A DNA stretch of 63,790 nucleotides, filler included, from Octopus bimaculoides (taxonomy: Eukaryota): the NCBI RefSeq assembly GCF_001194135.2. It is 4 parts of 4 records of this genome, joined end to end, with 100 filler letters (N's around TTAATTAATTAA, not from the genome) between each part and the next. Parts side by side here need not be neighbours in the genome. Positions count along the whole stretch, not along the records: positions 53,569 to 62,394 come from NC_069006.1; 3 more parts are not named here. One strand, given 5' to 3'. The position numbers and the translations under genes were made by a program. The notes below the pieces were generated by a model. It ran no database searches. It saw only the letters and a list, made by a program, of their open reading frames with translations, and was not told where the DNA came from. How positions within the stretch are numbered: position 1 is the first letter of the stretch; the number at the start of each line of letters is the position of its first letter. Positions 53,569-62,394 of the stretch are shown piece by piece.

Positions 53569-54420
53569 AAAACAATGTCAGATAAATTAGTTTATTTAAA
53601 AAAGACCCTTGTGGAATACGATGTGATGGGGGTAGGCTGAGTGGGGGTGGAAGAGGGAGAGAGAGAGAGAGTGAGTTAGAGAGAGAAAGAGAGAGGGGGA
53701 GAGATAGAGGAAGACTGGGAGACAGAGAAAGGTTGTAAGAGAAATATGATGGTGGGAGGGAGCGATCGCATGAAAGAGAAAAGATAACATGGCAACCTGG
53801 TAAAGAAAGAAAGAAAAAATGGATGGAAATGTGAGAGAGGGAGGGGGTGGAGGAAGAATGGATGTGAGTGAAACTAGGAATGAGAGAGAGAAAGAGAGAG
53901 AGAGAAAGAGAGAGGGGGGAGAGAGAGAGAGAGAGGGGGTAGGTGTATGTAGTTGTAAAATATAAGATTACGTGGGAATATCAGTGTGTGTGTGTGTGTG
54001 TGTGTGTGTATGACTGTGAGAGAGAATGTTCAAGTGAAAGAAATATGAGTGAGGGCATGTGTATGTGTGCGTGTGTATATGTGCGCGTGTGTGCGCGCGT
54101 GTGTGTGTGTGTATATGCGTGTGTGTGTGTGTAATAGAGAGAGAGAGAGAGAGTGAGTAGAAATGGGTGAGTGCCAGTGTGATGAGAGTCAAATTAATAT
54201 TTACAGTATATTTGCTGTTGTTGTTGTTGTTTTTTTTTCTTTTTTATTGTTTAGTTATAGTTTGTAAACAGAATTATGAGCCTTCATCGTATATTGACAA
54301 TAAAAAAAAACAGTTTAATATTAGTTCGTATAAGCCTCTGTCCTAATATTAGACAATTTTCCATAGTCAATAAACGGTGAACTCTCATAATTCTGTCTAC
54401 AAAATTTCATTTGCTGCCGT

Positions 54421-54482
54421 TTACTAATTCACGCACAATTCGCACATCTTTATTTAATTTTTTTTGTCTTCTTTCTTTACAG
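54421..54482 (+). promoter_or_regulatory. 3' splice site upstream of the glycosyltransferase exon
   Basis: Branch-like TACTAAT (54422-54428), long pyrimidine tract and TTTACAG ending at 54482; implies an upstream non-coding exon that I could not locate. Confidence 0.65.
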
Positions 54483-54608
54483 ACATCATACTGGCCAACA
54501 CTTCTGGCAGACTAACAGAGCAGTATCGAAGACGGTTCTAATCCAGACATTCTAATACTCATTTCCTGTCACCACTAGCATTCAAGCTCTTTGAATGTCA
54601 GCTGGCAA

Positions 54609-55916
54609 ATGTATATCGTCAGGAGACTCTCCAACCGACGGAGTTTCTGTGGAAGCTTAGCAATAATCATACTGCTCTGTTGTTTGGTCTATGCTTTGCT
54701 TGGTTCAAATCTGAAGATAATAGCTGTTTCAAACTTCCAGCTCATCAGGAAGTCTTTGCCAGAAGAACTACTGCGCCATGCAACTACTCGAAAGACAAGT
54801 TCCCAACATGGCAACATTGCGTGGCACACTAACCGCAATGTCGTCACAGCTTCTACGTTGGCAAAAAATATTTCTAAATTACATTCCAAACAGATGACGA
54901 CGCACCAAAATGTAATCCCAAAAAAAGTTACTAAAAAATTAATTTCTGGTACCAAGCAATCTAATCAAAAAAGTGTTCACAAAACAAAACATGTAAAAGA
55001 AGAGGCCTTGAGAAAAGACAATTTTCCAAAACGTTTTCATATACCTGATGTGCCCGCTGTGTCTGTTGATGACACAGTTCCTTATATACCAAAACCTGTG
55101 ATAAATCATTTCTTAACGTTACCAAAACGAGAATACACAGAAGAAGTTCTTATTTTGACTCCAATTCATAATGTCGCTGATCATTTGAATCACTATACTA
55201 ATCTTCTGAAGAATTTGACCTATCCTCGCCACCTGGTATCAGTGGCACTCGGTGAGGACTGTAGCACTGACGAAACGTTGATTGTGGCTAAGGGTGTTGT
55301 TGAGGAACTGTCCCACATATTCAAATCAGCCAGGCTGCTTCACTTTAACTTAACTGGTCAAATAACTGGGCGATGGAGTGTCGTGCATGATCACGCAATG
55401 CAGATGTCACGGCGCAGCCATCTGGCAAAATCGCGTAATCTCCTCTTACGGAACAGTCTGAAAAATGAAACATGGGTCCTGTGGATTGACAGCGACGTGT
55501 CACGCATACCCGGTGACTTGGTTCAGCAGCTAATCTCAGCTGACAAGGATGTTGTAGTTCCATCTTGCCTTTTTCATGATGGAGTCAACACAAGAGTTTA
55601 TGATAAAAACACTTGGCGGGAGACAAATTTATCATGGGAAAAGCAAAAGCACCTACAGCCAAACCAATTGGTTCTAGAGGGATATGGTCCGTCAAATCGG
55701 CTATATTTACCTCACCTGCGTGCAGAGGGTCGTTTGGTACCCATAGACGGTGTTGGTGGCTGCAGTCTTCTCGTTCGAGGAGACTGTCACAGGAAAGGAT
55801 TGATATTTCCAGAAGAAATATACCAACATCATATAGAAACAGAAGGTTTATCAAAGATGGCAAGAACTATGAAATTTTCTGTGTATGGAATGCCTTTTGT
55901 CGAAGTTTACCATTAA
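54609..55916 (+). CDS. Anp1/Mnn9/Van1-like (GT62-type) glycosyltransferase, type II membrane protein, 435 aa
   Basis: Basic N-tail, one hydrophobic helix (FCGSLAIIILLCCLVYALLG), S/T/K-rich stem, then VLILTPIHN..LTYP..DCS.D, RR..LAKSRN, WVLWIDSDV (DxD), DVVVP, DGVGGCSLLV and HIETEGLSKMA..GMP..EVYH, the motif order I recall for yeast Mnn9/Anp1/Van1. First in-frame ATG is 54609 (the track start is a TTG); TAA at 55914-55916. Confidence 0.88.
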   Translation: MYIVRRLSNRRSFCGSLAIIILLCCLVYALLGSNLKIIAVSNFQLIRKSLPEELLRHATTRKTSSQHGNIAWHTNRNVVTASTLAKNISKLHSKQMTTHQNVIPKKVTKKLISGTKQSNQKSVHKTKHVKEEALRKDNFPKRFHIPDVPAVSVDDTVPYIPKPVINHFLTLPKREYTEEVLILTPIHNVADHLNHYTNLLKNLTYPRHLVSVALGEDCSTDETLIVAKGVVEELSHIFKSARLLHFNLTGQITGRWSVVHDHAMQMSRRSHLAKSRNLLLRNSLKNETWVLWIDSDVSRIPGDLVQQLISADKDVVVPSCLFHDGVNTRVYDKNTWRETNLSWEKQKHLQPNQLVLEGYGPSNRLYLPHLRAEGRLVPIDGVGGCSLLVRGDCHRKGLIFPEEIYQHHIETEGLSKMARTMKFSVYGMPFVEVYH

Positions 55917-56269
55917 ANNNNNNNNNNGATTAAAATTTTATCTGAATATAAGAAAAATTATTGAAATTTTATCTGGAAAAGAAAAAAAAAAAAATTCAGA
56001 ATGGAAATGCTATTTTCAATGTAAATTAATTCGGATTTGAAACGTTCTATAAATCATTTCATGCTGGAATAAATATGTTTTGATAATGCCTTATGTTTAA
56101 TATATAAATCACACGAAAAAGAAAAACATACTACCATTTTATAATAATACAAAACCATACTTCAATGTTCTTTGTCTATTTATTATTATTGTTGTTGTTG
56201 TTGTTGTTGTTATTCTACTACTGCTCCTTTTTATGATTATTATTATTATTATTGTTTTATTTCTTGTTG

Positions 56270-56318
<49 letters not shown>

Positions 56319-56502
56319 TATTGTTATTGCAATTGTTGGGATGCTGGTAGTGGTGGGGGAGAGTTATTTGTTCCATTCCTTCTGTTATTCTAGAAAACCA
56401 AAATTTCTTACATGACCAGAAGGCTATGAAAATCAGATTACAGAGCAGAGATTAGTTTCTCAAATTGAAATGCTTACATACACACATACATACATACATA
56501 CA

Positions 56503-56538
<36 letters not shown>

Positions 56539-57166
56539 TANNNNNNNNNNNNNNNNNNNNNNNNNNNNNNNNNNNNNNNNNNNNNNNNNNNNNNNNNNNN
56601 NNNNNNNNNNNNNNNNNNNNNNNNNNNNNNNNNNNNNNNNNNNNNNNNNNNNNNNNNNNNNNNNNNNNNNNNNNNNNNNNNNNNNNNNNNNNNNNNNNNN
56701 NNNNNNNNNNNNNNNNNNNNNNNNNNNNNNNNNNNNNNNNNNNNNNNNNNNNNNNNNNNNNNNNNNNNNNNNNNNNNNNNNNNNNNNNNNNNNNNNNNNN
56801 NNNNNNNNNNNNNNNNNNNNNNNNNNNNNNNNNNNNNNNNNNNNNNNNNNNNNNNNNNNNNNNNNNNNNNNNNNNNNNNNNNNNNNNNNNNNNNNNNNNN
56901 NNNNNNNNNNNNNNNNNNNNNNNNNNNNNNNNNNNNNNNNNNNNNNNNNNNNNNNNNNNNNNNNNNNNNNNNNNNNNNNNNNNNNNNNNNNNNNNNNNNN
57001 NNNNNNNNNNNNNNNNNNNNNNNNNNNNNNNNNNNNNNNNNNNNNNNNNNNNNNNNNNNNNNNNNNNNNNNNNNNNNNNNNNNNNNNNNNNNNNNNNNNN
57101 NNNNNNNNNNNNNNNNNNNNNNNNNNNNNNNNNNNNNNNNNNNNNNNNNNNNNNNNNNNNNNNNAA

Positions 57167-57369
57167 CAGTCAACAGAATTTTACGGGGCAGGGATACGTG
57201 CTCTCATTCGAAGGTGGAACATTACTATTGAGAGAAACGGTGACTATGTTGAGAAGTAGGGATGTGATCCACAGAGGACCAGCTTCATTTTGATGTATGA
57301 TACATGTTCTTGTGTTGGTAATTATAACCTGTCCTAAACAAAATGGCATTACTTTTTGACTCACCCTCG
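57167..57369 (+). mobile_element. Right end of a second copy of the same mariner family
   Basis: Near-identical to 61738-61941 including the right TIR and TA; left part hidden in the N gap. Confidence 0.9.
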
Positions 57370-57639
57370 TACAAGCAGTCTGGAGCATTTCATTAGTTTG
57401 TGTAACATTTTAACTTATTCTTTTACATGGCACTCTCTCTTTTAACGACGCCCCAGATATAGCAGTCTATGGGATTTAATTTGGCGAGTTTGGAGGCCAT
57501 AAATTTGGTGTTCCATAGTCGTAAAGATTGTTCAATATTCATTTTTCGGTTTTGATGAACTTTACGAGAAAGTGCTGAGTTTTGTTGAAATACACTTAGC
57601 CTTCAACTGCGTCGTTCGGCCGGCCAGAGCTTAACAATT

Positions 57640-57972
57640 GTCTTCTTCAGCAACTCGACTTACTCAGCAGCATTAATTCTAAGATCTCGTGAAAGACGTC
57701 TGGCAGTAAGGTAGAGGAATATCTTCCCCTCAACGTTGAACATTGAAACAATTCTGAAATGATTCCGAACTGATCAACGTTCTTCGATTCTTCCTCCCTT
57801 AGAAAGTTAACCCTTTGTGCACACGTCCATTAACGAGGCACCTTGCCGTCTTTCATATCACCTTTATCAAACTTCAGTATGTTATGAAGTGCCCAACGTT
57901 ACTACTCCACAGACTGTGGAGTAATGATTGTACAGTTTTGTACACCTTGTAATGCATTTCATCCCATCCTTG
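57640..57972 (-). mobile_element. Degenerate RLE-type (Hero/R2-like) non-LTR retrotransposon RT fragment
   Basis: Frameshifted pieces MHYKVYK, EEESKNVDQF and NVEGKIFLYLTARRLS resemble the start of the RT domain of these elements. Confidence 0.55.
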
Positions 57973-57980
57973 GTCTAAGC

Positions 57981-58282
57981 TAGAAGTTCTCAACCGGCGT
58001 CCATATGACTCTTAGCGGTCCATATTACTATTGGCGGTCCATGTGACTCTTGGCGATCCATATGACTCTTGGTGGTCCATATAACACTTAGTTATATGGA
58101 CCGCCAATGAATTGGTTACACTTCTGCAATACACAAAATATCTTAACAATTTTTTTAAAAATACAATTCCTAATAATACTTAATTATAAGGATATTTTTT
58201 TTAATAACTAATGGCTCCGGTCGACCTGAGTAAAATAAGAATTAAAAGGGTTGCATAGATAAATAATAGTTGAAAACCACTG
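57981..58282. mobile_element. hAT-type MITE with 8-bp TSD and internal ~19-bp tandem repeats
   Basis: TSD GTCTAAGC at 57973-57980 and 58283-58290; imperfect 15-bp TIRs TAGAAGTTCTCAACC / AGTTGAAAACCACTG; about five (C/T)GGTCCATATGACTCTTGG-like units. Confidence 0.85.
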
Positions 58283-59709
58283 GTCTAAGCTTTCTTTTGT
58301 ATTCTTGGCCAACACTACCTAGACCTCTTTCCCTCTCTAATTGAAATTAGAGGTAAAGAATCCAAGGGAGGTAATTCTTCTATACACGTTTTCAACTATT
58401 GAAATTCAACTGAATTTCAATAATTCAGGTGATTATATAAATAAATTATATCATAATTAGTTATTCAATAATTACTGATGTGAAGAAACTGATTAATATC
58501 TTTTTTTTTAATTAATATTATTTCAAGACTCAACTTTCTCGACAGACGTTGTTTAATATAAAAAAAATAAAAAGTTTTGAATAGTACAACAATGCACTAA
58601 GAGTTTCTTCCCCTTGACGATATGTCGTTTTATTTGTTTTTTCGAAGGCTGTTATAAAGAAATAAATGGAAGAACTAAGCCTCGACTTCAGTCGATTTAT
58701 CAAACTTTCGGATCNNNNNNNNNNNNNNNNNNNNNNNNNNNNNNNNNNNNNNNNNNNNNNNNNNNNNNNNNNNNNNNNNNNNNNNNNNNNNNNNNNNNNN
58801 NNNNNNNNNNNNNNNNNNNNNNNNNNNNNNNNNNNNNNNNNNNNNNNNNNNNNNNNNNNNNNNNNNNNNNNNNNNNNNNNNNNNNNNNNNNNNNNNNNNN
58901 NNNNNNNNNNNNNNNNNNNNNNNNNNNNNNNNNNNNNNNNNNNNNNNNNNNNNNNNNNNNNNNNNNNNNNNNNNNNNNNNNNNNNNNNNNNNNNNNNNNN
59001 NNNNNNNNNNNNNNNNNNNNNNNNNNNNNNNNNNNNNNNNNNNNNNNNNNNNNNNNNNNNNNNNNNNNNNNNNNNNNNNNNNNNNNNNNNNNNNNNNNNN
59101 NNNNNNNNNNNNNNNNNNNNNNNNNNNNNNNNNNNNNNNNNNNNNNNNNNNNNNNNNNNNNNNNNNNNNNNNNNNNNNNNNNNNNNNNNNNNNNNNNNNN
59201 NNNNNNNNNNNNNNNNNNNNNNNNNNNNNNNNNNNNNNNNNNNNNNNNNNNNNNNNNNNNNNNNNNNNNNNNNNNNNNNNNNNNNNNNNNNNNNNNNNNN
59301 NNNNNNNNNNNNNNNNNNNNNNNNNNNNNNNNNNNNNNNNNNNNNNNNNNNNNNNNNNNNNNNNNNNNNNNNNNNNNNNNNNNNNNNNNNNNNNNNNNNN
59401 NNNNNNNNNNNNNNNNNNNNNNNNNNNNNNNNNNNNNNNNNNNNNNNNNNNNNNNNNNNNNNNNNNNNNNNNNNNNNNNNNNNNNNNNNNNNNNNNNNNN
59501 NNNNNNNNNNNNNNNNNNNNNNNNNNNNNNNNNNNNNNNTGTTGTTTGCACCACCTGTCCTCGTCTGTTGTTGTTTTTTCGTACATTCTCCCATATATAT
59601 ATATATATATATATATATGGGAGAATGTACGAAAAAACAACAACAGACGAGGACAGGTGGTGCAAACAACAAAAGGATGTATTAGTATGACGCTCGGGAA
59701 TACGGAAAG

Positions 59710-59746
59710 TCTTTAACGTTTCGAGCTACGCTCTTCAACAGAAAGA
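59710..59746 (-). ncRNA. Minimal type I hammerhead-ribozyme-like motif
   Basis: Minus strand TCTTT-CTGTTGA-A-GAGC(GTA)GCTC-GAA-ACGT-T-AAAGA: 5-bp stem I, 4-bp stem II, palindromic loopless stem III; the core deviates (A6U). Confidence 0.5.
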
Positions 59747-59873
59747 ATACGGAGAAAACAAGGAGAAAAACACTGAGAAAAAAAATCGAATGGTGTTTGG
59801 TGAACGATCTACGAGTAGATATATATGGAAAAAAGACAAAGTAGAAAATGCTAAAATACTTTTATAAAGAACA

Positions 59874-59916
59874 TTACAGGACCGGTTTCGATCCTTGAGA
59901 TCTTTTCAACAGTAAA
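59874..59916 (-). ncRNA. Second, degenerate minimal hammerhead-like motif
   Basis: Minus strand TTACTG-TTGAAAA-GATC(TCAAG)GATC-GAA-ACCGGT-C-CTGTAA: GUC site, palindromic stem III, stem I 5/6 pairs; core has C3U and G8A changes. Confidence 0.4.
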
Positions 59917-60111
59917 TATGAATAATAGATTTTTGAAAAATTATTGAAAAATTAAATTTTGGTAAATTTAGAAGAAAAGTCTTTTTAAAGACATATTTGT
60001 ATAGTATTCAATTAACAGCGGTATTTTTCTTGTTTCTGCCTCTCTGTCTCACTTGTTAACTCTTGTGGGTTCGAAGGACTGCTGTCCTTCTTCGAACCCA
60101 CAGCAGTTTTA

Positions 60112-60330
60112 ACGTACGTAGTAACGTACGTTCGTTCGTTTGTTCGATCGTTCGTTCGTACGTACTTACGTACATTCGTTCTTTCGTTCGTTCTTACGTA
60201 GTATTTTCGTTCGTTCGTTCTTTCGTTCGTACGTACGGACGTATTTACGTACGTTCGTTCGTAGATACGTACATTCGTTCGTTCGTTTGTTCGTACGTAC
60301 ATACGTTAGTTAATTCGTTTGTTCGTTCTT
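60112..60330. repeat. Degenerate CpG-rich (TTCG)n/(TACG)n tetranucleotide array
   Basis: Direct inspection. Confidence 0.9.
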
Positions 60331-60397
60331 TCCTCCTAGAAAAAGTTGTTCAGCCCTGGATAGATAGCGTATGCAATGGAAGGTCATATGTGTCTCT

Positions 60398-60822
60398 GTA
60401 AGACTCTGCACTATTACACATGGCTCTAGTAGCACAGGAATGGATGGCTGAAAATTTTCATGATCACATAACCCCTAACATTTGGCCTTCAAATTCCCCA
60501 GATCTCAAACCATGGGACTATTACATGTGGAACGTTGTTGAGAGAGAGGTCAATCAACATGGCCATAACATCAAAGATTCTTTGAAAGCTGCCATAGTCA
60601 GAGTAATATCCAAAATGAACCAGAACCACTTGATTCAAGCATGGAGATGATTTAGATCTCATATAGAAGCAGTTGTTGGAGTTGAAGGTGGCTTTATTGA
60701 ATAACATTATAGAAAAGTTTTATTTTTATTCTTAGCATTTTTTGACAAATAAAGTTATTATCTCTTATTATACATGTATTTTTATAAGCATAAATCTCTC
60801 CTCAAATAGCTTACGCACTCTG
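60398..60822 (+). mobile_element. Tc1/mariner-superfamily (DD37D/maT-like) transposase 3' fragment with right end
   Basis: WMAENFHDHITPNIWPSNSPDLKPWDYYMWNVVE ... IEAVVGVEGGFIE*; ends CACTCTG followed by TA. Confidence 0.8.
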
Positions 60823-61001
60823 TATACACATGCATACATGTACGCAGGTTATGTCGATTTCCTAGAGTGAGCATGCTCAGGTACAGCAGGAACATTTGAT
60901 CAATATAAACAAATCATCTGTGCCGGTTCTTTAGCAGGAAATTGCAGAACCCTCACCTGCAGTTTACAACAGGTGCAAGTCCATGAGTAGGAGCAATAAT
61001 A

Positions 61002-61941
61002 GAAGGGCGAGTCAAAAAAGTAATGCCATTTTCTTTATTTCATGTGAAGTTTTTGATAAAAATAACTGAAAATTTTCCCAGTTATAAATGATTATATCAT
61101 TTACGTTCTGAAATATTTTGTTATTTACTTTCCAGGTTTTTAGACTGATAAGGAAAATTCAAAATGGCTGCCCCCCCTTAGAGTTCCGTCAAAAACAAAG
61201 AGCAGAGTTTGAATTTCTTGTTGCTGAGAGGGAAACCCCTGTGAACATTTACCGACGATTACAAAGTGTCTTTGAAGACAATACTTCAGGTTATAGGAAT
61301 GTATGCAGGTGGGTCCGTCGTCTGAAAGATGAAAAGGTGGGAACTGTGAGTGTCGCCGATAAACCCTGTTCTGGCCGGCCGTCTGTCCGCTTCTGTAAAT
61401 CCTGCCAATAAAGCAAAAGCAGATGCATTGATCAGAGAAGACAGGCGCTTAACTGTTGATGAGTTGGCAGAAAACCATGAAGTGAGCCATGGAAGTGCTT
61501 ACAACGTTGTCGAATCACTTGGTTTTTCAAAAGTGTGTGCCCGTTCGGTACCGAGAGAGCTGACTACCGAATGCAAAACTGACAGGGTCAATGCTTGCAC
61601 TGAACTTCTCAAATAAAGTCACCAGATTTAGCGCCTTCGGACTATCATCTCTTCGGCCCCATGAAAGAGGGTTTGAGAGGCAAACATTATTCCAATGGCG
61701 AGGAAGTGAAAACTGTAGTGAAGAAGTGGCTCAAAGAACAGTCAACAGAATTTTACAGAGCGGAGATAGATGCTCTCATTCGAAGGTGGAACATTGATAT
61801 TGAGAAAAACAGTGACTGTGTTGAGAAGTAGGGATGTGATCCACAGAGGACCAGCTTCATTTTGATGTATGATACATGTTCTTGTGTTGGTAATTATAAC
61901 CTGTCCTAAACAAAATGGCATTACTTTTTGACTCACCCTCG
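61002..61941 (+). mobile_element. Internally deleted mariner transposon
   Basis: TA flanks; ~30-bp TIRs (GAAGGGCGAGTCAAAAAAGTAATGCCATTT / AAATGGCATTACTTTTTGACTCACCCTCG); frameshifted transposase with HTH region, CARSVPREL (WVPxxL-like) and SPDLAPSDYHLF; the central catalytic segment is missing. Confidence 0.92.
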
Positions 61942-61971
61942 TAGTAGCAGAAATAATAATAATAATAATAA

Positions 61972-62185
61972 TAGTTTCAAATTTTAGCACAAGGCCAGCA
62001 AATTCAGAGGAGGGGTTAAATCGATTATATCAACCCCAGTGTTCAACTGGTACTTATTTTATTGACCCCAAAAAGGATGAAAGGGAAAGTCAACCTCGGT
62101 GGAATTTGAACTCAGAAACGTAACAAGTGAAATACCACTAAGCATTTCATCAAGCGTGCTAACGATTCTGCCAGTCCACCGCCTG
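61972..62185 (-). mobile_element. SINE family A copy
   Basis: Full-length similarity with an (ATT)n tail at 61952-61971. Confidence 0.85.
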
Positions 62186-62341
62186 AATAATAACAACAAC
62201 AACAATAGTAAATAATGATAAATAGAGAATTGGTGATCAGTTAATACCAGATCATATTATATTAATTAATAAATATTAAAATTAATAAAACAAAATATTT
62301 AAAAAAATCACCCCTTTTAAAGGGTCAGTATAGCATTTTCA

Positions 62342-62394
<53 letters not shown>

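What the first reader, a model, noticed from the sequence alone, without database searches (positions are those of the whole stretch)
54609..55916. Fungal-type Mnn9/Anp1 (GT62-like) glycosyltransferase as an intact single-coding-exon gene in a cephalopod
Seen: an uninterrupted 435-codon ORF with type II Golgi topology, a DxD motif (WIDSD), an upstream spliceosomal acceptor and cephalopod-type repeats on both sides, which argues against simple contamination. Known: Mnn9/Van1/Anp1 are subunits of the yeast Golgi mannan polymerases that build alpha-1,6-mannan, and vertebrates lack the family. Inference: this may be a horizontally acquired or patchily retained enzyme, pointing to an uncharacterised cephalopod glycan-polymer pathway (mucus, skin, egg coat).
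Basis: partly seen in the sequence, partly recalled or inferred. Interest (0 to 1): 0.78.

Follow-up and report, generated by a model that had tools for sequence, protein, structure and literature searches.

The report
Octopus Mnn9/Anp1-family (GT62) Golgi glycosyltransferase gene
This is a real, intact octopus gene for a Golgi sugar-adding enzyme of the family best known from yeast mannan synthesis, but it was not recently acquired by cephalopods: the same intron-free gene family runs through molluscs, annelids and ribbon worms.

Summary
Window 54609-55916 (+) is an uninterrupted 435-codon ORF. It encodes a type II membrane protein whose residues 174-435 match Pfam Anp1 (PF03452, E=2.6e-52). 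The only solved relative is yeast Mnn9. The four Mnn9 residues shown to be needed for metal binding or activity are conserved: D294, D296, D332 and the C-terminal H435.

It is not contamination. It lies on a 26.6-Mb Octopus bimaculoides chromosome, is collinear with O. vulgaris, and is under purifying selection.

The "cephalopod HGT" reading fails. Orthologues occur in octopods, gastropods, bivalves, a chiton, annelids and a nemertean. They form one spiralian clade (69-85% NJ bootstrap) that nests in neither fungi nor bacteria. All eight spiralian loci checked have a single-exon CDS. Amphioxus has a separate member with introns.

Bacteria carry many homologues at up to 44% identity. However, the octopus protein has the "WxET…LEGY" segment found in all 16 named fungi and in the sampled protists, and in none of 23 bacteria. 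It is therefore the eukaryotic type.

I could not resolve whether the spiralian family is an old gene kept patchily or an ancient transfer into stem Spiralia. Activity (probably a Mn2+-dependent GDP-mannose α-mannosyltransferase) and expression are untested. Databases already label it "mnn9-like". Interest is moderate.

The parts
54469..54482 (+). Polypyrimidine tract plus AG: candidate 3' splice acceptor of an intron in the 5' UTR
   Evidence: The sequence ttctttctttacag is present and conserved in O. vulgaris as ttctttcgttacag. Its use is not tested because I had no RNA data.
54483..54608 (+). Candidate 5' UTR part of the coding exon. Contains an in-frame stop TAG at 54576-54578 and an out-of-frame upstream ATG at 54595
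   Evidence: Read. The surrounding 421-nt stretch (about 400 nt upstream of the ATG) is 96% identical to O. vulgaris.
54609..55916 (+). Complete CDS, 435 codons plus TAA; GT62/Anp1-family glycosyltransferase
   Evidence: ORF. Pfam PF03452 E=2.6e-52. The identical protein is called on O. bimaculoides chromosome CM046626.1. dN/dS versus O. vulgaris is 0.32.
54609..54704 (+). Short basic cytosolic tail (residues 1-13) and signal-anchor transmembrane helix (about residues 13-32)
   Evidence: Kyte-Doolittle maximum 2.73 at residues 13-31. AF2 helix at 10-48.
54705..55127 (+). Stem region (about residues 33-173), rich in K/T/S/N, predicted disordered and fast-evolving
   Evidence: pLDDT is below 50 for residues 55-134. 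dN/dS is 0.57 for residues 1-170 against 0.18 for the catalytic part.
55128..55913 (+). GT-A catalytic domain (residues 174-435)
   Evidence: Pfam Anp1 covers residues 174-402. phmmer to Mnn9 3zf8 covers residues 177-435, E=1.4e-29. AF2 pLDDT is above 90 here, and Foldseek's top hit is 3zf8 (E=3e-23, TM 0.77, rmsd 2.7 Å).
55488..55496 (+). DxD motif D294-S-D296, aligned to yeast Mnn9 D236-A-D238 (metal and donor binding)
   Evidence: Alignment. Residue roles are from PMC9769593 and PMC3787745. D294 is invariant and D296 at least 90% conserved across 57 homologues.
55602..55604 (+). D332, aligned to yeast Mnn9 D280 (lines the putative mannose site; D280N is inactive)
   Evidence: Invariant (the YDxNxW motif).
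55614..55685 (+). Segment W336-Y359, 'WRETNLSWEKQKHLQPNQLVLEGY': the eukaryote-type signature
   Evidence: The EGY motif is present in 16/16 named fungi, the aphelid, Plasmodiophora, 2 of 3 EukProt protists and most spiralians (25/29 named molluscs). It is absent from 0/23 bacteria, which have ILQPPxGxGR or a deletion.
55911..55913 (+). H435, the last residue, aligned to yeast Mnn9 H389 (Mn2+ ligand, indispensable for activity)
   Evidence: Invariant.
55918..55927 (.). 10-N assembly gap directly after the stop codon. Candidate poly(A) signals ATTAAA at 55929 and AATAAA at 56068 follow

Best explanation
The ORF is a genuine, selectively maintained nuclear gene of Octopus bimaculoides. It encodes a type II (N-in, lumenal C-terminal) membrane glycosyltransferase of the Anp1/Mnn9/Van1 family (CAZy GT62).

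Shown by alignment and modelling:
- A short basic tail and one signal-anchor helix.
- A disordered stem of about 140 residues.
- A GT-A catalytic domain whose closest solved structure is yeast Mnn9.
- Conservation of both DxD aspartates (D294, D296), the putative mannose-site aspartate (D332) and the C-terminal Mn2+-ligand histidine (H435).

Inferred mechanism: it sits in the Golgi, binds a GDP-sugar (most likely GDP-mannose) through Mn2+, and transfers the sugar with retention of configuration, most likely as α-mannose. The acceptor is an unknown lumenal glycan.

Evolution: it is one cephalopod orthologue of an old spiralian gene family. The family is found in molluscs, annelids and nemerteans. 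It has at least two paralogue groups that predate the chiton-cephalopod split, expansions in bivalves, and an intron-free CDS throughout. It carries the eukaryotic (fungus/protist-like) sequence signature, not the bacterial one. It is therefore not a cephalopod-specific or recent horizontal acquisition.

The origin of the spiralian family is not resolved. It could be an ancient eukaryotic gene lost from most other animals, or one ancient transfer or retroposition in the spiralian stem.
For: Family and fold:
- Pfam PF03452, 178 bits.
- Mnn9 is the only PDB sequence hit, E=1.4e-29, aligned through to the last residue.
- AF2 catalytic domain has pLDDT above 90, and Foldseek's top hit is 3zf8 with TM 0.77.

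Catalytic residues: mapped. Their roles come from PMC3787745 and PMC9769593. They are invariant or nearly so in 57 homologues.

Resident gene:
- Lies on a 26.6-Mb chromosome.
- Collinear 3-kb block at 90% identity plus ordered flanking blocks in O. vulgaris.
- Orthologue on a 10-Mb Argonauta scaffold.
- CDS GC is 41.6%, against 33.9% in the flanks.
- dN/dS is 0.32 overall, 0.18 in the catalytic part, and about 0.09 versus Argonauta.

Distribution: named hits in cephalopods, gastropods, bivalves, a chiton, Owenia, Helobdella and Lineus.

Tree:
- Spiralia 69-85%, cephalopods 100%, mollusc group A 90%, paralogue B 86.5%.
- Spiralia+fungi 0%, Spiralia+bacteria 0%.

Single-exon CDS in 8 of 8 spiralian loci checked.

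Eukaryote-type WxET…EGY segment.
Against: - I had no transcript, protein, localisation or enzyme data. The Logan contigs of a cephalopod orthologue end at simple repeats and do not prove expression.
- Donor sugar and linkage are extrapolated from fungal enzymes that are only about 28% identical. The guanine-covering Q124 of Mnn9 is H187 here (alignment, role), and the Mnn9 hairpin loop is about 6 residues shorter.
- No α-1,6-mannan-like polymer is known to me from molluscs.
- The trees are neighbour-joining on about 260 columns, with an unresolved backbone.
- About 30 sequences I count as spiralian are unnamed metagenome or SRA proteins placed only by the tree.
- Absence from other animal phyla rests on the visible parts of capped hit lists, not on exhaustive genome searches.
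Confidence: 0.8

Rival explanations
1. Patchy vertical retention. GT62 was present in the opisthokont or early eukaryotic ancestor, was inherited by animals, and survives only in Spiralia and cephalochordates after losses in vertebrates, ecdysozoans and others. The spiralian copy became intron-free, for example by retroposition in the stem lineage.
For: - The eukaryote-type WxET…EGY segment is shared by spiralians, amphioxus (as LAGY), all 16 fungi, the aphelid, Plasmodiophora and two of three EukProt protists, and by no bacterium.
- The family occurs in early-diverging fungi (Coemansia, Umbelopsis, Mortierellomycotina) at bit scores equal to amphioxus.
- The amphioxus gene has at least 3 spliceosomal introns.
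- The spiralian clade is not nested in any candidate donor clade.
Against: - Spiralia+amphioxus is recovered in only 5-15% of bootstraps.
- No cnidarian, sponge, echinoderm, arthropod, nematode, vertebrate or choanoflagellate name appeared in the visible hit lists, so many independent losses are needed.
- All spiralian copies lack CDS introns.
Confidence: 0.42
2. Ancient horizontal transfer. A single GT62 gene from a fungus-like or protist eukaryote entered the stem spiralian genome as an intron-free copy, then duplicated into paralogues A and B and the bivalve expansions. Amphioxus acquired or retained its copy independently.
For: - The CDS is intron-free in 8 of 8 spiralian loci across three phyla and both paralogue groups.
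- The visible animal distribution is restricted to Spiralia plus Branchiostoma.
- Spiralia and amphioxus do not group.
- There is a published claim of GT62 (MNN9) acquisition by HGT in Sphaeropleales green algae (PMC11811186).
Against: - No donor clade is identified. Spiralia+fungi and Spiralia+bacteria each get 0%.
- Lack of introns is common among animal Golgi glycosyltransferases and is also explained by retroposition.
- Composition is fully host-like.
Confidence: 0.38
3. Recent, cephalopod-specific horizontal acquisition from a fungus.
For: Single coding exon. The family is best known from yeast. A 2017 survey reported PF03452 only in fungi (PMC5225481).
Against: - Orthologues at 51-61% identity over the catalytic domain occur in gastropods, bivalves and a chiton, and at 52% in the annelid Owenia.
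- Cephalopods are one 100%-supported twig inside a 90%-supported mollusc clade.
- Yeast Mnn9 is the most distant sequence sampled (107.5 bits, against 276 for Owenia).
Confidence: 0.01
4. Assembly contamination by fungal or bacterial DNA.
For: The family is abundant in bacteria, with hits in 334 GTDB species, and in fungi. An N gap abuts the stop codon.
Against: - The same gene occupies the same collinear neighbourhood in an independent O. vulgaris chromosome assembly and is present in Argonauta.
- The 421-nt stretch ending just inside the CDS (about 400 nt upstream of the ATG) is 96% identical between species.
- GC3 is a host-like 38%.
- dS of 0.078 versus O. vulgaris fits species divergence.
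Confidence: 0.01
5. Bacterial origin. The spiralian genes descend from a bacterial Anp1-domain gene, since bacterial homologues score as high as or higher than fungal ones.
For: - Streptomyces reaches 44% identity to the octopus domain.
- Crocosphaera scores 178 bits and Anaerolineae 174.5 bits, against 107.5 for yeast Mnn9.
- Amphioxus' best non-amphioxus hits in a word-seeded search were bacterial.
Against: - Bacteria form their own group (53-74%) that excludes Spiralia. Spiralia+bacteria gets 0%.
- None of 23 bacterial sequences has the EGY segment that the octopus shares with fungi and protists.
- Early-diverging fungi score as high as bacteria (Umbelopsis 181 bits). The low yeast score reflects fast evolution in Saccharomyces.
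Confidence: 0.05
6. The protein is a real GT62 member but does something other than α-mannosyl transfer. It could use a different nucleotide sugar, or act mainly as a non-catalytic or allosteric partner, as yeast Mnn9 does for Van1.
For: - It is only about 28% identical to Mnn9.
- Q124 is replaced by H187.
- The hairpin loop is shorter.
- Aspergillus AnpA shows that GT62 acceptor specificity varies.
- A second octopod paralogue exists that could be a partner.
Against: - All residues whose mutation kills Mnn9 activity are conserved.
- The catalytic domain is under strong purifying selection.
Confidence: 0.25

Closest known systems
Saccharomyces cerevisiae Mnn9 (GT62; PDB 3ZF8), a subunit of mannan polymerases M-Pol I and II
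   Same: - Only solved homologue by sequence (E=1.4e-29) and top structural match (TM 0.77, rmsd 2.7 Å).
- Type II topology and GT-A fold.
- DxD, D280-equivalent and C-terminal His all conserved.
- The protein ends at the same ...VYH position.
- Shares the EGY segment.
   Different: - Only about 28% identical, and the lowest-scoring relative sampled (107.5 bits).
- The octopus hairpin loop is about 6 residues shorter, and Q124 is H187.
- The octopus has a long disordered stem.
- I did not look for the other M-Pol subunits (Mnn10/11, Hoc1).
- The yeast product (cell-wall mannoprotein outer chain) has no known animal counterpart.
GT62 proteins of early-diverging fungi (Umbelopsis, Gongronella, Apophysomyces, Coemansia, Mortierellomycotina)
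   Same: Best-scoring named non-animal eukaryotes (172-181 bits, about 38-40% identity). The W…EGY segment is nearly superimposable: Umbelopsis WQETNESWSLQSTLKPNDVLVEGY against octopus WRETNLSWEKQKHLQPNQLVLEGY.
   Different: They group with other fungi (50-70%), not with Spiralia (0%). They are uncharacterised biochemically.
Aspergillus fumigatus AnpA (GT62 α-1,6-mannosyltransferase of galactomannan core)
   Same: Same family, with the same DxD plus C-terminal His metal site (PMC9769593). It shows that a GT62 enzyme can act outside N-glycan outer-chain synthesis.
   Different: It belongs to a fungus-specific clade, and its acceptor (α-1,2-mannooligosaccharide of fungal galactomannan) is not known in animals.
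Bacterial Anp1-domain glycosyltransferases (stand-alone ~250-300 aa; Streptomyces ~800-aa Gly_transf_sug+GT2+Anp1 fusions; GT4+Anp1 fusions)
   Same: Same Pfam domain, up to 44% identity, with the same invariant catalytic residues.
   Different: - No signal-anchor or stem.
- They sit in polysaccharide-synthesis operons.
- They lack the EGY segment, having ILQPPxGxGR or a deletion plus a 20-25-aa insert before IETEG.
- They form a separate clade.
Branchiostoma 'mannan polymerase complex subunit mnn9-like'
   Same: The only other named non-spiralian animal member I found. It is eukaryote-type (LAGY) and about 41% identical to the octopus domain.
   Different: It has at least 3 introns in the CDS. 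It does not group with Spiralia (5-15%), and its position is unresolved.

Membership tests
Anp1/Mnn9/Van1 family (Pfam PF03452; CAZy GT62) | Significant match to the family profile above the curated threshold | tested here: met
   178.3 bits against a gathering cutoff of 28.8, E=2.6e-52, profile positions 17-261 of 263.
Anp1/Mnn9/Van1 family (Pfam PF03452; CAZy GT62) | GT-A fold closest to Mnn9 | tested here: met
   In the AF2 model the catalytic domain has pLDDT above 90. Foldseek's first hit is 3zf8 (E=3e-23, TM 0.77). The next hits (COLGALT1 and similar) are eight orders of magnitude weaker. This is a prediction, not an experimental structure.
Anp1/Mnn9/Van1 family (Pfam PF03452; CAZy GT62) | DxD motif plus C-terminal histidine coordinating Mn2+ (Mnn9 D236, D238, H389) | tested here: met
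   D294, D296 and H435 align to these residues. They are conserved.
Anp1/Mnn9/Van1 family (Pfam PF03452; CAZy GT62) | Aspartate lining the mannose site (Mnn9 D280; D280N is inactive) | tested here: met
   D332 in the YDKNTW motif, invariant in 57 homologues.
Anp1/Mnn9/Van1 family (Pfam PF03452; CAZy GT62) | β-hairpin extension next to the active site (Mnn9 I262-N283) | tested here: met
   AF2 predicts a hairpin with strands at 315-324 and 327-330. The aligned segment is about 6 residues shorter than in Mnn9.
Anp1/Mnn9/Van1 family (Pfam PF03452; CAZy GT62) | Type II membrane topology with Golgi/ER residence | tested here: inconclusive
   The topology prediction is met. Subcellular location cannot be tested here.
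Anp1/Mnn9/Van1 family (Pfam PF03452; CAZy GT62) | Mn2+-dependent GDP-mannose α-mannosyltransferase activity (α-1,6, or α-1,2 priming) | not testable with these tools
   Needs a recombinant enzyme assay.
Yeast-type mannan polymerase complex (M-Pol I/II) | Hetero-oligomer of two or more GT62 paralogues (Mnn9+Van1, or Mnn9+Anp1 with GT34/GT32 partners) making a long α-1,6-mannan backbone | not tested
   A second octopod GT62 paralogue exists: P0136 in Argonauta, named after O. bimaculoides LOC106869556. I examined neither interaction, GT34/GT32 partners nor polymer. The spiralian paralogues are not orthologues of Mnn9, Van1 or Anp1, because all named fungal sequences group together and away from Spiralia.
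Horizontally transferred gene specific to cephalopods | Absent from sister lineages of the recipient | tested here: not met
   Present in gastropods, bivalves, a chiton, annelids and a nemertean.
Horizontally transferred gene specific to cephalopods | Recipient sequences nested inside the donor clade | tested here: not met
   Spiralia+fungi 0% and Spiralia+bacteria 0%. The sister group of Spiralia is unresolved, with no candidate grouping above about 10% of bootstraps.
Horizontally transferred gene specific to cephalopods | Lack of introns or foreign composition | tested here: inconclusive
   The CDS is intron-free, but this holds in all eight spiralian loci checked. Composition is host-like.

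The most novel reading that the evidence does not exclude
Spiralian animals (molluscs, annelids, nemerteans) have kept, for over half a billion years, their own intron-free lineage of catalytically intact GT62 'mannan-polymerase-type' enzymes. The lineage was gained by one ancient transfer from a fungus-like eukaryote into the spiralian stem. It builds a still-undescribed α-mannose-containing glycan or polymer of mucus, egg coats, shell matrix or cell surfaces. The two ancient paralogues act as an Mnn9/Van1-like pair, and the bivalve expansions diversify the product.
Probability: 0.15. Interest if true: 0.7.

Novelty: new member of a known kind. Interest (0 to 1): 0.4.

Why it matters
GT62 is treated in the literature as a fungal cell-wall family. 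A 2017 survey found PF03452 only in fungi (PMC5225481), and an mSphere paper discusses the family only within Ascomycota with one rhizobial outgroup. Three things follow from this locus:
- The family is much wider than that: hundreds of bacterial species, early-diverging fungi, an aphelid and Rhizaria.
- Animals have a conserved, selected, apparently catalytically competent branch of it across Spiralia, plus a separate copy in amphioxus.
- That gives a concrete enzyme to test for an unknown invertebrate glycan, and a clean case for asking whether patchy animal genes reflect loss or ancient transfer.

It does not support a cephalopod innovation. Genome annotation pipelines already call these genes 'mnn9-like'.

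Tried and rejected
1. Contamination: rejected on chromosome context, collinearity with O. vulgaris and host-like composition.

2. Truncation of the ORF by the adjacent N gap: rejected. Orthologues and Mnn9 end at the same His.

3. Using raw scores to name the nearest outgroup: misleading. Bacteria, amphioxus and Mucoromycota tie at about 175-181 bits, while yeast Mnn9 scores 107.5. I used trees and the indel/motif signature instead.

4. Using simple length indels as a marker separating eukaryotes from bacteria: rejected. One bacterial type (Streptomyces, cyanobacteria) has the same segment lengths. Only the motif content (EGY versus QPPxGxGR) discriminates.

5. Proving expression from Logan SRA contigs of a cephalopod orthologue: inconclusive. 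The contigs break at simple repeats and one begins with adapter sequence.

6. Locating the exon boundary from conservation between the two Octopus species: uninformative. The whole stretch upstream of the ATG is 96% identical.

7. Literature:
- Searches for animal GT62 or 'mnn9-like' found no paper on animals.
- The search combining HGT, molluscs and glycosyltransferases turned up only a metazoan HGT compendium, and its supplements were not held as text.

8. First GTDB scan with an 18-sequence alignment failed because no stretch was conserved enough. It was repeated with 6 sequences.

9. IMG/VR scan for viral relatives as possible vectors: none found.

10. Rfam scan on the piece: nothing.
Full report
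**1. The observation**

The piece 53569-62394 contains one long ORF. It runs from ATG 54609 to TAA 55914-55916, 435 codons. An in-frame TAG lies 33 nt upstream at 54576-54578 (sequence). The listed features are all present:
- A basic N-terminal tail (MYIVRRLSNRRSF), followed by a single hydrophobic segment. The Kyte-Doolittle maximum is 2.73 at residues 13-31, and AlphaFold predicts a helix at 10-48.
- WIDSD at residues 292-296.
- A polypyrimidine-AG at 54469-54482.
- Microsatellites on both sides.

A 10-N gap starts one base after the stop codon, but the ORF is not truncated. The O. vulgaris (435 aa) and Argonauta (438 aa) orthologues also end ...EVYH*, and yeast Mnn9 aligns up to that final His.

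**2. What the protein is**

- Pfam gives Anp1 (PF03452) at 178 bits, E=2.6e-52, for residues 174-402. There is also a marginal GT2 hit.
- Against all PDB sequences the only hit is S. cerevisiae Mnn9 (3zf8), E=1.4e-29, aligned over residues 177-435.
- An AlphaFold2 model built from a 57-sequence alignment has mean pLDDT 81.8. The region from about 145 to 435 is above 90, and the stem (55-134) is below 50.
- Foldseek against the PDB returns 3zf8 first (E=3e-23, TM 0.77 on the target, rmsd 2.7 Å). Generic GT-A enzymes follow at E of 6e-15 or weaker.

The functionally tested residues of Mnn9 come from the literature:
- D236 and D238 form the DxD motif.
- D280 lines the putative mannose site.
- H389 is a Mn2+ ligand.
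- Mutants D236N, D280N and an H389 mutant are inactive (PMC3787745; PMC9769593).

These map onto octopus D294, D296, D332 and H435. D294, D332 and H435 are invariant, and D296 at least 90% conserved, among 57 homologues. Two differences stand out. The guanine-covering Q124 is H187 in octopus. The Mnn9-specific hairpin (I262-N283) is present but about 6 residues shorter.

**3. It is a resident, selected octopus gene**

- The exact protein is called on chromosome CM046626.1 (26.6 Mb) of Octopus bimaculoides GCA_001194135.2.
- O. vulgaris has a 94%-identical orthologue on a 41-Mb chromosome. Argonauta hians has a 66%-identical one.
- The O. bimaculoides and O. vulgaris loci are collinear. A 3-kb block at 90% identity spans the gene and about 1 kb upstream and 0.6 kb downstream, with further ordered blocks on both sides.
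- A 421-nt stretch ending just inside the CDS (about 400 nt upstream of the ATG), including the candidate acceptor, is 96% identical between the two species.
- CDS GC is 41.6% and GC3 is 38%, in a 34% GC neighbourhood.
- Nei-Gojobori dN/dS versus O. vulgaris is 0.32 overall, 0.57 for tail plus stem and 0.18 for the catalytic domain. Versus Argonauta it is about 0.09, with dS saturated.

Contamination and pseudogene status are therefore rejected.

**4. Distribution**

The word-seeded search of 5.8 billion proteins returned 129 hits. Every named hit is a mollusc or an annelid:
- Octopus and Argonauta.
- Gastropods: Patella, Haliotis, Lottia, Littorina, Batillaria, Babylonia, Nucella.
- Bivalves: Pecten, Mizuhopecten, Argopecten, Ylistrum, Saccostrea, Pinctada, Mytilus, Mercenaria, Ruditapes, Mya, Dreissena, Potamilus.
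- The chiton Liolophura.
- Annelids: Owenia and Helobdella.

Several of these already carry the RefSeq name 'mannan polymerase complex subunit mnn9-like'.

Cluster look-ups added:
- The nemertean Lineus longissimus, with two genes.
- Branchiostoma, in three species.
- A second, divergent paralogue group found in Argonauta and the chiton. The Argonauta protein is named after O. bimaculoides LOC106869556.

The exhaustive representative search found 1017 clusters at E≤1e-3. Among the higher-scoring ones:
- Many are bacterial, as shown by operon context, by names, and by hits in 334 GTDB species across Streptomyces, cyanobacteria, Chloroflexota, Acidobacteriota and Proteobacteria at up to 44% identity.
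- Others are early-diverging fungi (Coemansia, Umbelopsis, Lunasporangiospora, Gongronella, Apophysomyces, Linnemannia), Pezizomycotina GT62, the aphelid Amoeboaphelidium, Plasmodiophora and EukProt protists.

No vertebrate, arthropod, nematode, cnidarian, sponge or echinoderm name appeared in any visible list. Those lists are capped, so this is not proof of absence.

**5. Phylogeny and signatures**

I aligned 140 catalytic domains with MAFFT L-INS-i and kept 261 columns. I then ran bootstrapped neighbour-joining, 200 replicates for the main run and 100 for each of five alternative settings.

| Grouping | Bootstrap support |
|---|---|
| All spiralian sequences, including paralogue B and about 30 unnamed sequences | 80% (69-85% across settings) |
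| Cephalopod group A | 100% |
| Mollusc group A | 90% |
| Paralogue B | 86.5% |
| Bacteria | 53-74% |
| Named fungi, with yeast Mnn9 inside Ascomycota | 50-70% |
| Spiralia+fungi | 0% |
| Spiralia+bacteria | 0% |
| Spiralia+amphioxus | 5-15% |

No sister group for Spiralia is recovered in more than about 10% of replicates, so the backbone is unresolved.

Raw scores are uninformative about the outgroup. Umbelopsis scores 181 bits, Branchiostoma 178, Crocosphaera 178, Coemansia 172, Streptomyces 167 and yeast Mnn9 107.5.

A qualitative character is more telling. After the invariant YDxNxW, the sequences differ as follows:
- The 16 named fungi, the aphelid, Plasmodiophora, two of three EukProt protists and most spiralians (25 of 29 named molluscs) have a segment of about 34-38 residues reading WxE[TS]..S…φφφEGY. 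Octopus has WRETNLSWEKQKHLQPNQLVLEGY and Umbelopsis has WQETNESWSLQSTLKPNDVLVEGY. Amphioxus has …LLLAGY.
- None of the 23 bacterial sequences has it. One bacterial type has F.L.P…DGILQPPxGxGR. The other lacks the segment and carries a 20-25-residue insert before IETEG.

The octopus gene is therefore of the eukaryotic type, so 'fungal-type' is fair in that sense. But it is not derived from within sampled fungi.

**6. Gene structure across taxa**

The CDS is a single exon in all eight spiralian loci checked:
- O. bimaculoides, O. vulgaris, and Argonauta paralogues A and B.
- Pecten, Haliotis and Owenia.
- Lineus, where the gene sits between exons of an RPS4 gene.

The amphioxus gene spans 2.8 kb for 358 codons, with at least 3 introns in the catalytic region. 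Lack of introns is thus a feature of the whole spiralian family, not of cephalopods.

**7. Mechanism**

Shown by alignment and modelling: a signal-anchored, lumenally oriented GT-A enzyme with an intact DxD/His metal site and an intact sugar-site aspartate.

Inferred from the family (GT62 retaining α-mannosyltransferases; Mnn9 strictly requires Mn2+): it resides in the Golgi, binds GDP-mannose through Mn2+, and adds α-linked mannose to an unknown lumenal glycan. I rate this about 0.5 for GDP-Man and α-Man specifically. The acceptor is unknown. So is whether it polymerises, and whether it works with paralogue B the way Mnn9 works with Van1.

**8. Origin**

Recent or cephalopod-specific HGT is refuted. 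Two scenarios remain, and I cannot separate them.

- Vertical retention of an old eukaryotic gene, with many losses in animals. For: the shared eukaryotic signature, the amphioxus copy with introns, and no nesting in any donor clade. Against: the number of losses required, and no support for animal monophyly.
- One ancient transfer into the spiralian stem. A retroposition there would likewise explain the intron-free CDS but fits under vertical retention. For: universal lack of introns and a restricted distribution. There is a published precedent of claimed GT62 HGT into Sphaeropleales algae. Against: no donor is identified.

A bacterial donor is unlikely given the signature and the tree.

**9. 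Comparison with what is known, and novelty**

The gene passes every sequence and structure test for GT62 membership. Activity and complex formation are untested.

It is not an orthologue of Mnn9, Van1 or Anp1. It belongs to a separate spiralian branch.

Annotation pipelines already name it 'mnn9-like'. The searchable literature contains no paper on animal GT62. One survey states that PF03452 is fungus-only.

I rate it a new member of a known kind, of moderate interest. It is not a cephalopod novelty. It is a clear pointer to an unstudied invertebrate glycosylation activity and a good test case for loss versus ancient transfer.

**Limits**

- The trees are NJ only, because no ML software was available.
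- Hit lists are capped.
- I had no RNA-seq, localisation or biochemical data.

Noticed in passing
window 55918-55927; also 56541-57164 and 58715-59539: A 10-N assembly gap starts one base after the stop codon of the gene. Two larger N gaps (624 and 825 nt) lie downstream. The 3' UTR is therefore incompletely assembled in this version.
   Followed up: partly
window 54595-54660: An out-of-frame upstream ATG at 54595 opens a short uORF of about 21 codons that overlaps the main start codon at 54609. This ATG is conserved in O. vulgaris. It could regulate translation.
   Followed up: no
window 61118-61616 and 57165-57259: Degenerate mariner-like transposon remnants. The ORF at 61118-61411 gives a weak HTH_48 (Mos1 transposase HTH) hit, E=0.002, below the Pfam threshold. 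The ORF tail after the N gap (…FYGAGIRALIRRWNITIERNGDYVEK) resembles a mariner transposase C-terminus, but that is from memory and untested.
   Followed up: partly
window 53652-54132, 56231-56540, 57999-58082, 60125-60332, 62346-62394: Dense simple repeats: (AG)n, (TG)n, (TTA)n, (TACA)n, a 19-bp unit in 4.4 copies, (CGTT)n in 52 copies and (TA)n. The (CGTT)n array generates the spurious 'RTNE/VRSF' ORFs on both strands seen.
   Followed up: yes
L098 4001-5044 (Lineus longissimus OU342996.1): The nemertean single-exon GT62 gene lies between exons of a ribosomal protein S4 gene, so it is apparently nested in an intron of that gene.
   Followed up: no
proteins P0142 (Mercenaria), P0382 (Ruditapes), P0143, P0146, P0157, P0175: A divergent bivalve subclade has lost the eukaryote-type EGY segment (17-19 residues instead of 34) and gained a 13-26-residue insert before IETEG. 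This mimics the architecture of one bacterial type. Yet the subclade nests inside the 90%-supported mollusc clade. It could be convergent loop remodelling or an alignment/NJ artefact.
   Followed up: partly
L008 8001-10490; L007 8001-9935; proteins P0448, P0453-P0458 and similar: Bacteria encode fusion proteins with an Anp1 domain. One type is about 800 aa: Gly_transf_sug (the Pfam family of the yeast GT32 enzymes Och1/Hoc1) + GT2 + Anp1, named as Streptomyces and other actinomycete proteins. Another is a GT4 + Anp1 fusion. The two loci examined, a Gly_transf_sug+GT2+Anp1 gene in an unnamed bacterial genome (L008) and the GT4+Anp1 gene in a metagenome (L007), lie next to glycosyltransferase or flippase genes. 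They look like single-polypeptide analogues of the multi-subunit yeast mannan polymerases.
   Followed up: partly
L090 5001-7766 (Branchiostoma floridae CM022888.1): The amphioxus GT62 gene has at least 3 introns in the catalytic region. In a word-seeded search its best non-amphioxus hits were short bacterial Anp1 proteins and an aphelid protein, not molluscs. Its relation to the spiralian clade is unresolved.
   Followed up: partly
proteins P0115, P0119, P0120, P0240, P0113 (contigs up to 718 kb): A clade of unnamed metagenomic or SRA proteins carries the EGY motif with a 15-18-residue longer segment (…SPGDNATSEDVVKYF…LELEGYGE). The organism is unknown.
   Followed up: no
literature: A 2017 survey (PMC5225481) states that PF03452 genes occur only in fungi. 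PMC9769593 says GT62 is not conserved in Basidiomycota. The hit lists here show the family in hundreds of bacterial species, Mucoromycota, Zoopagomycota, an aphelid, Rhizaria, Spiralia and amphioxus.
   Followed up: yes
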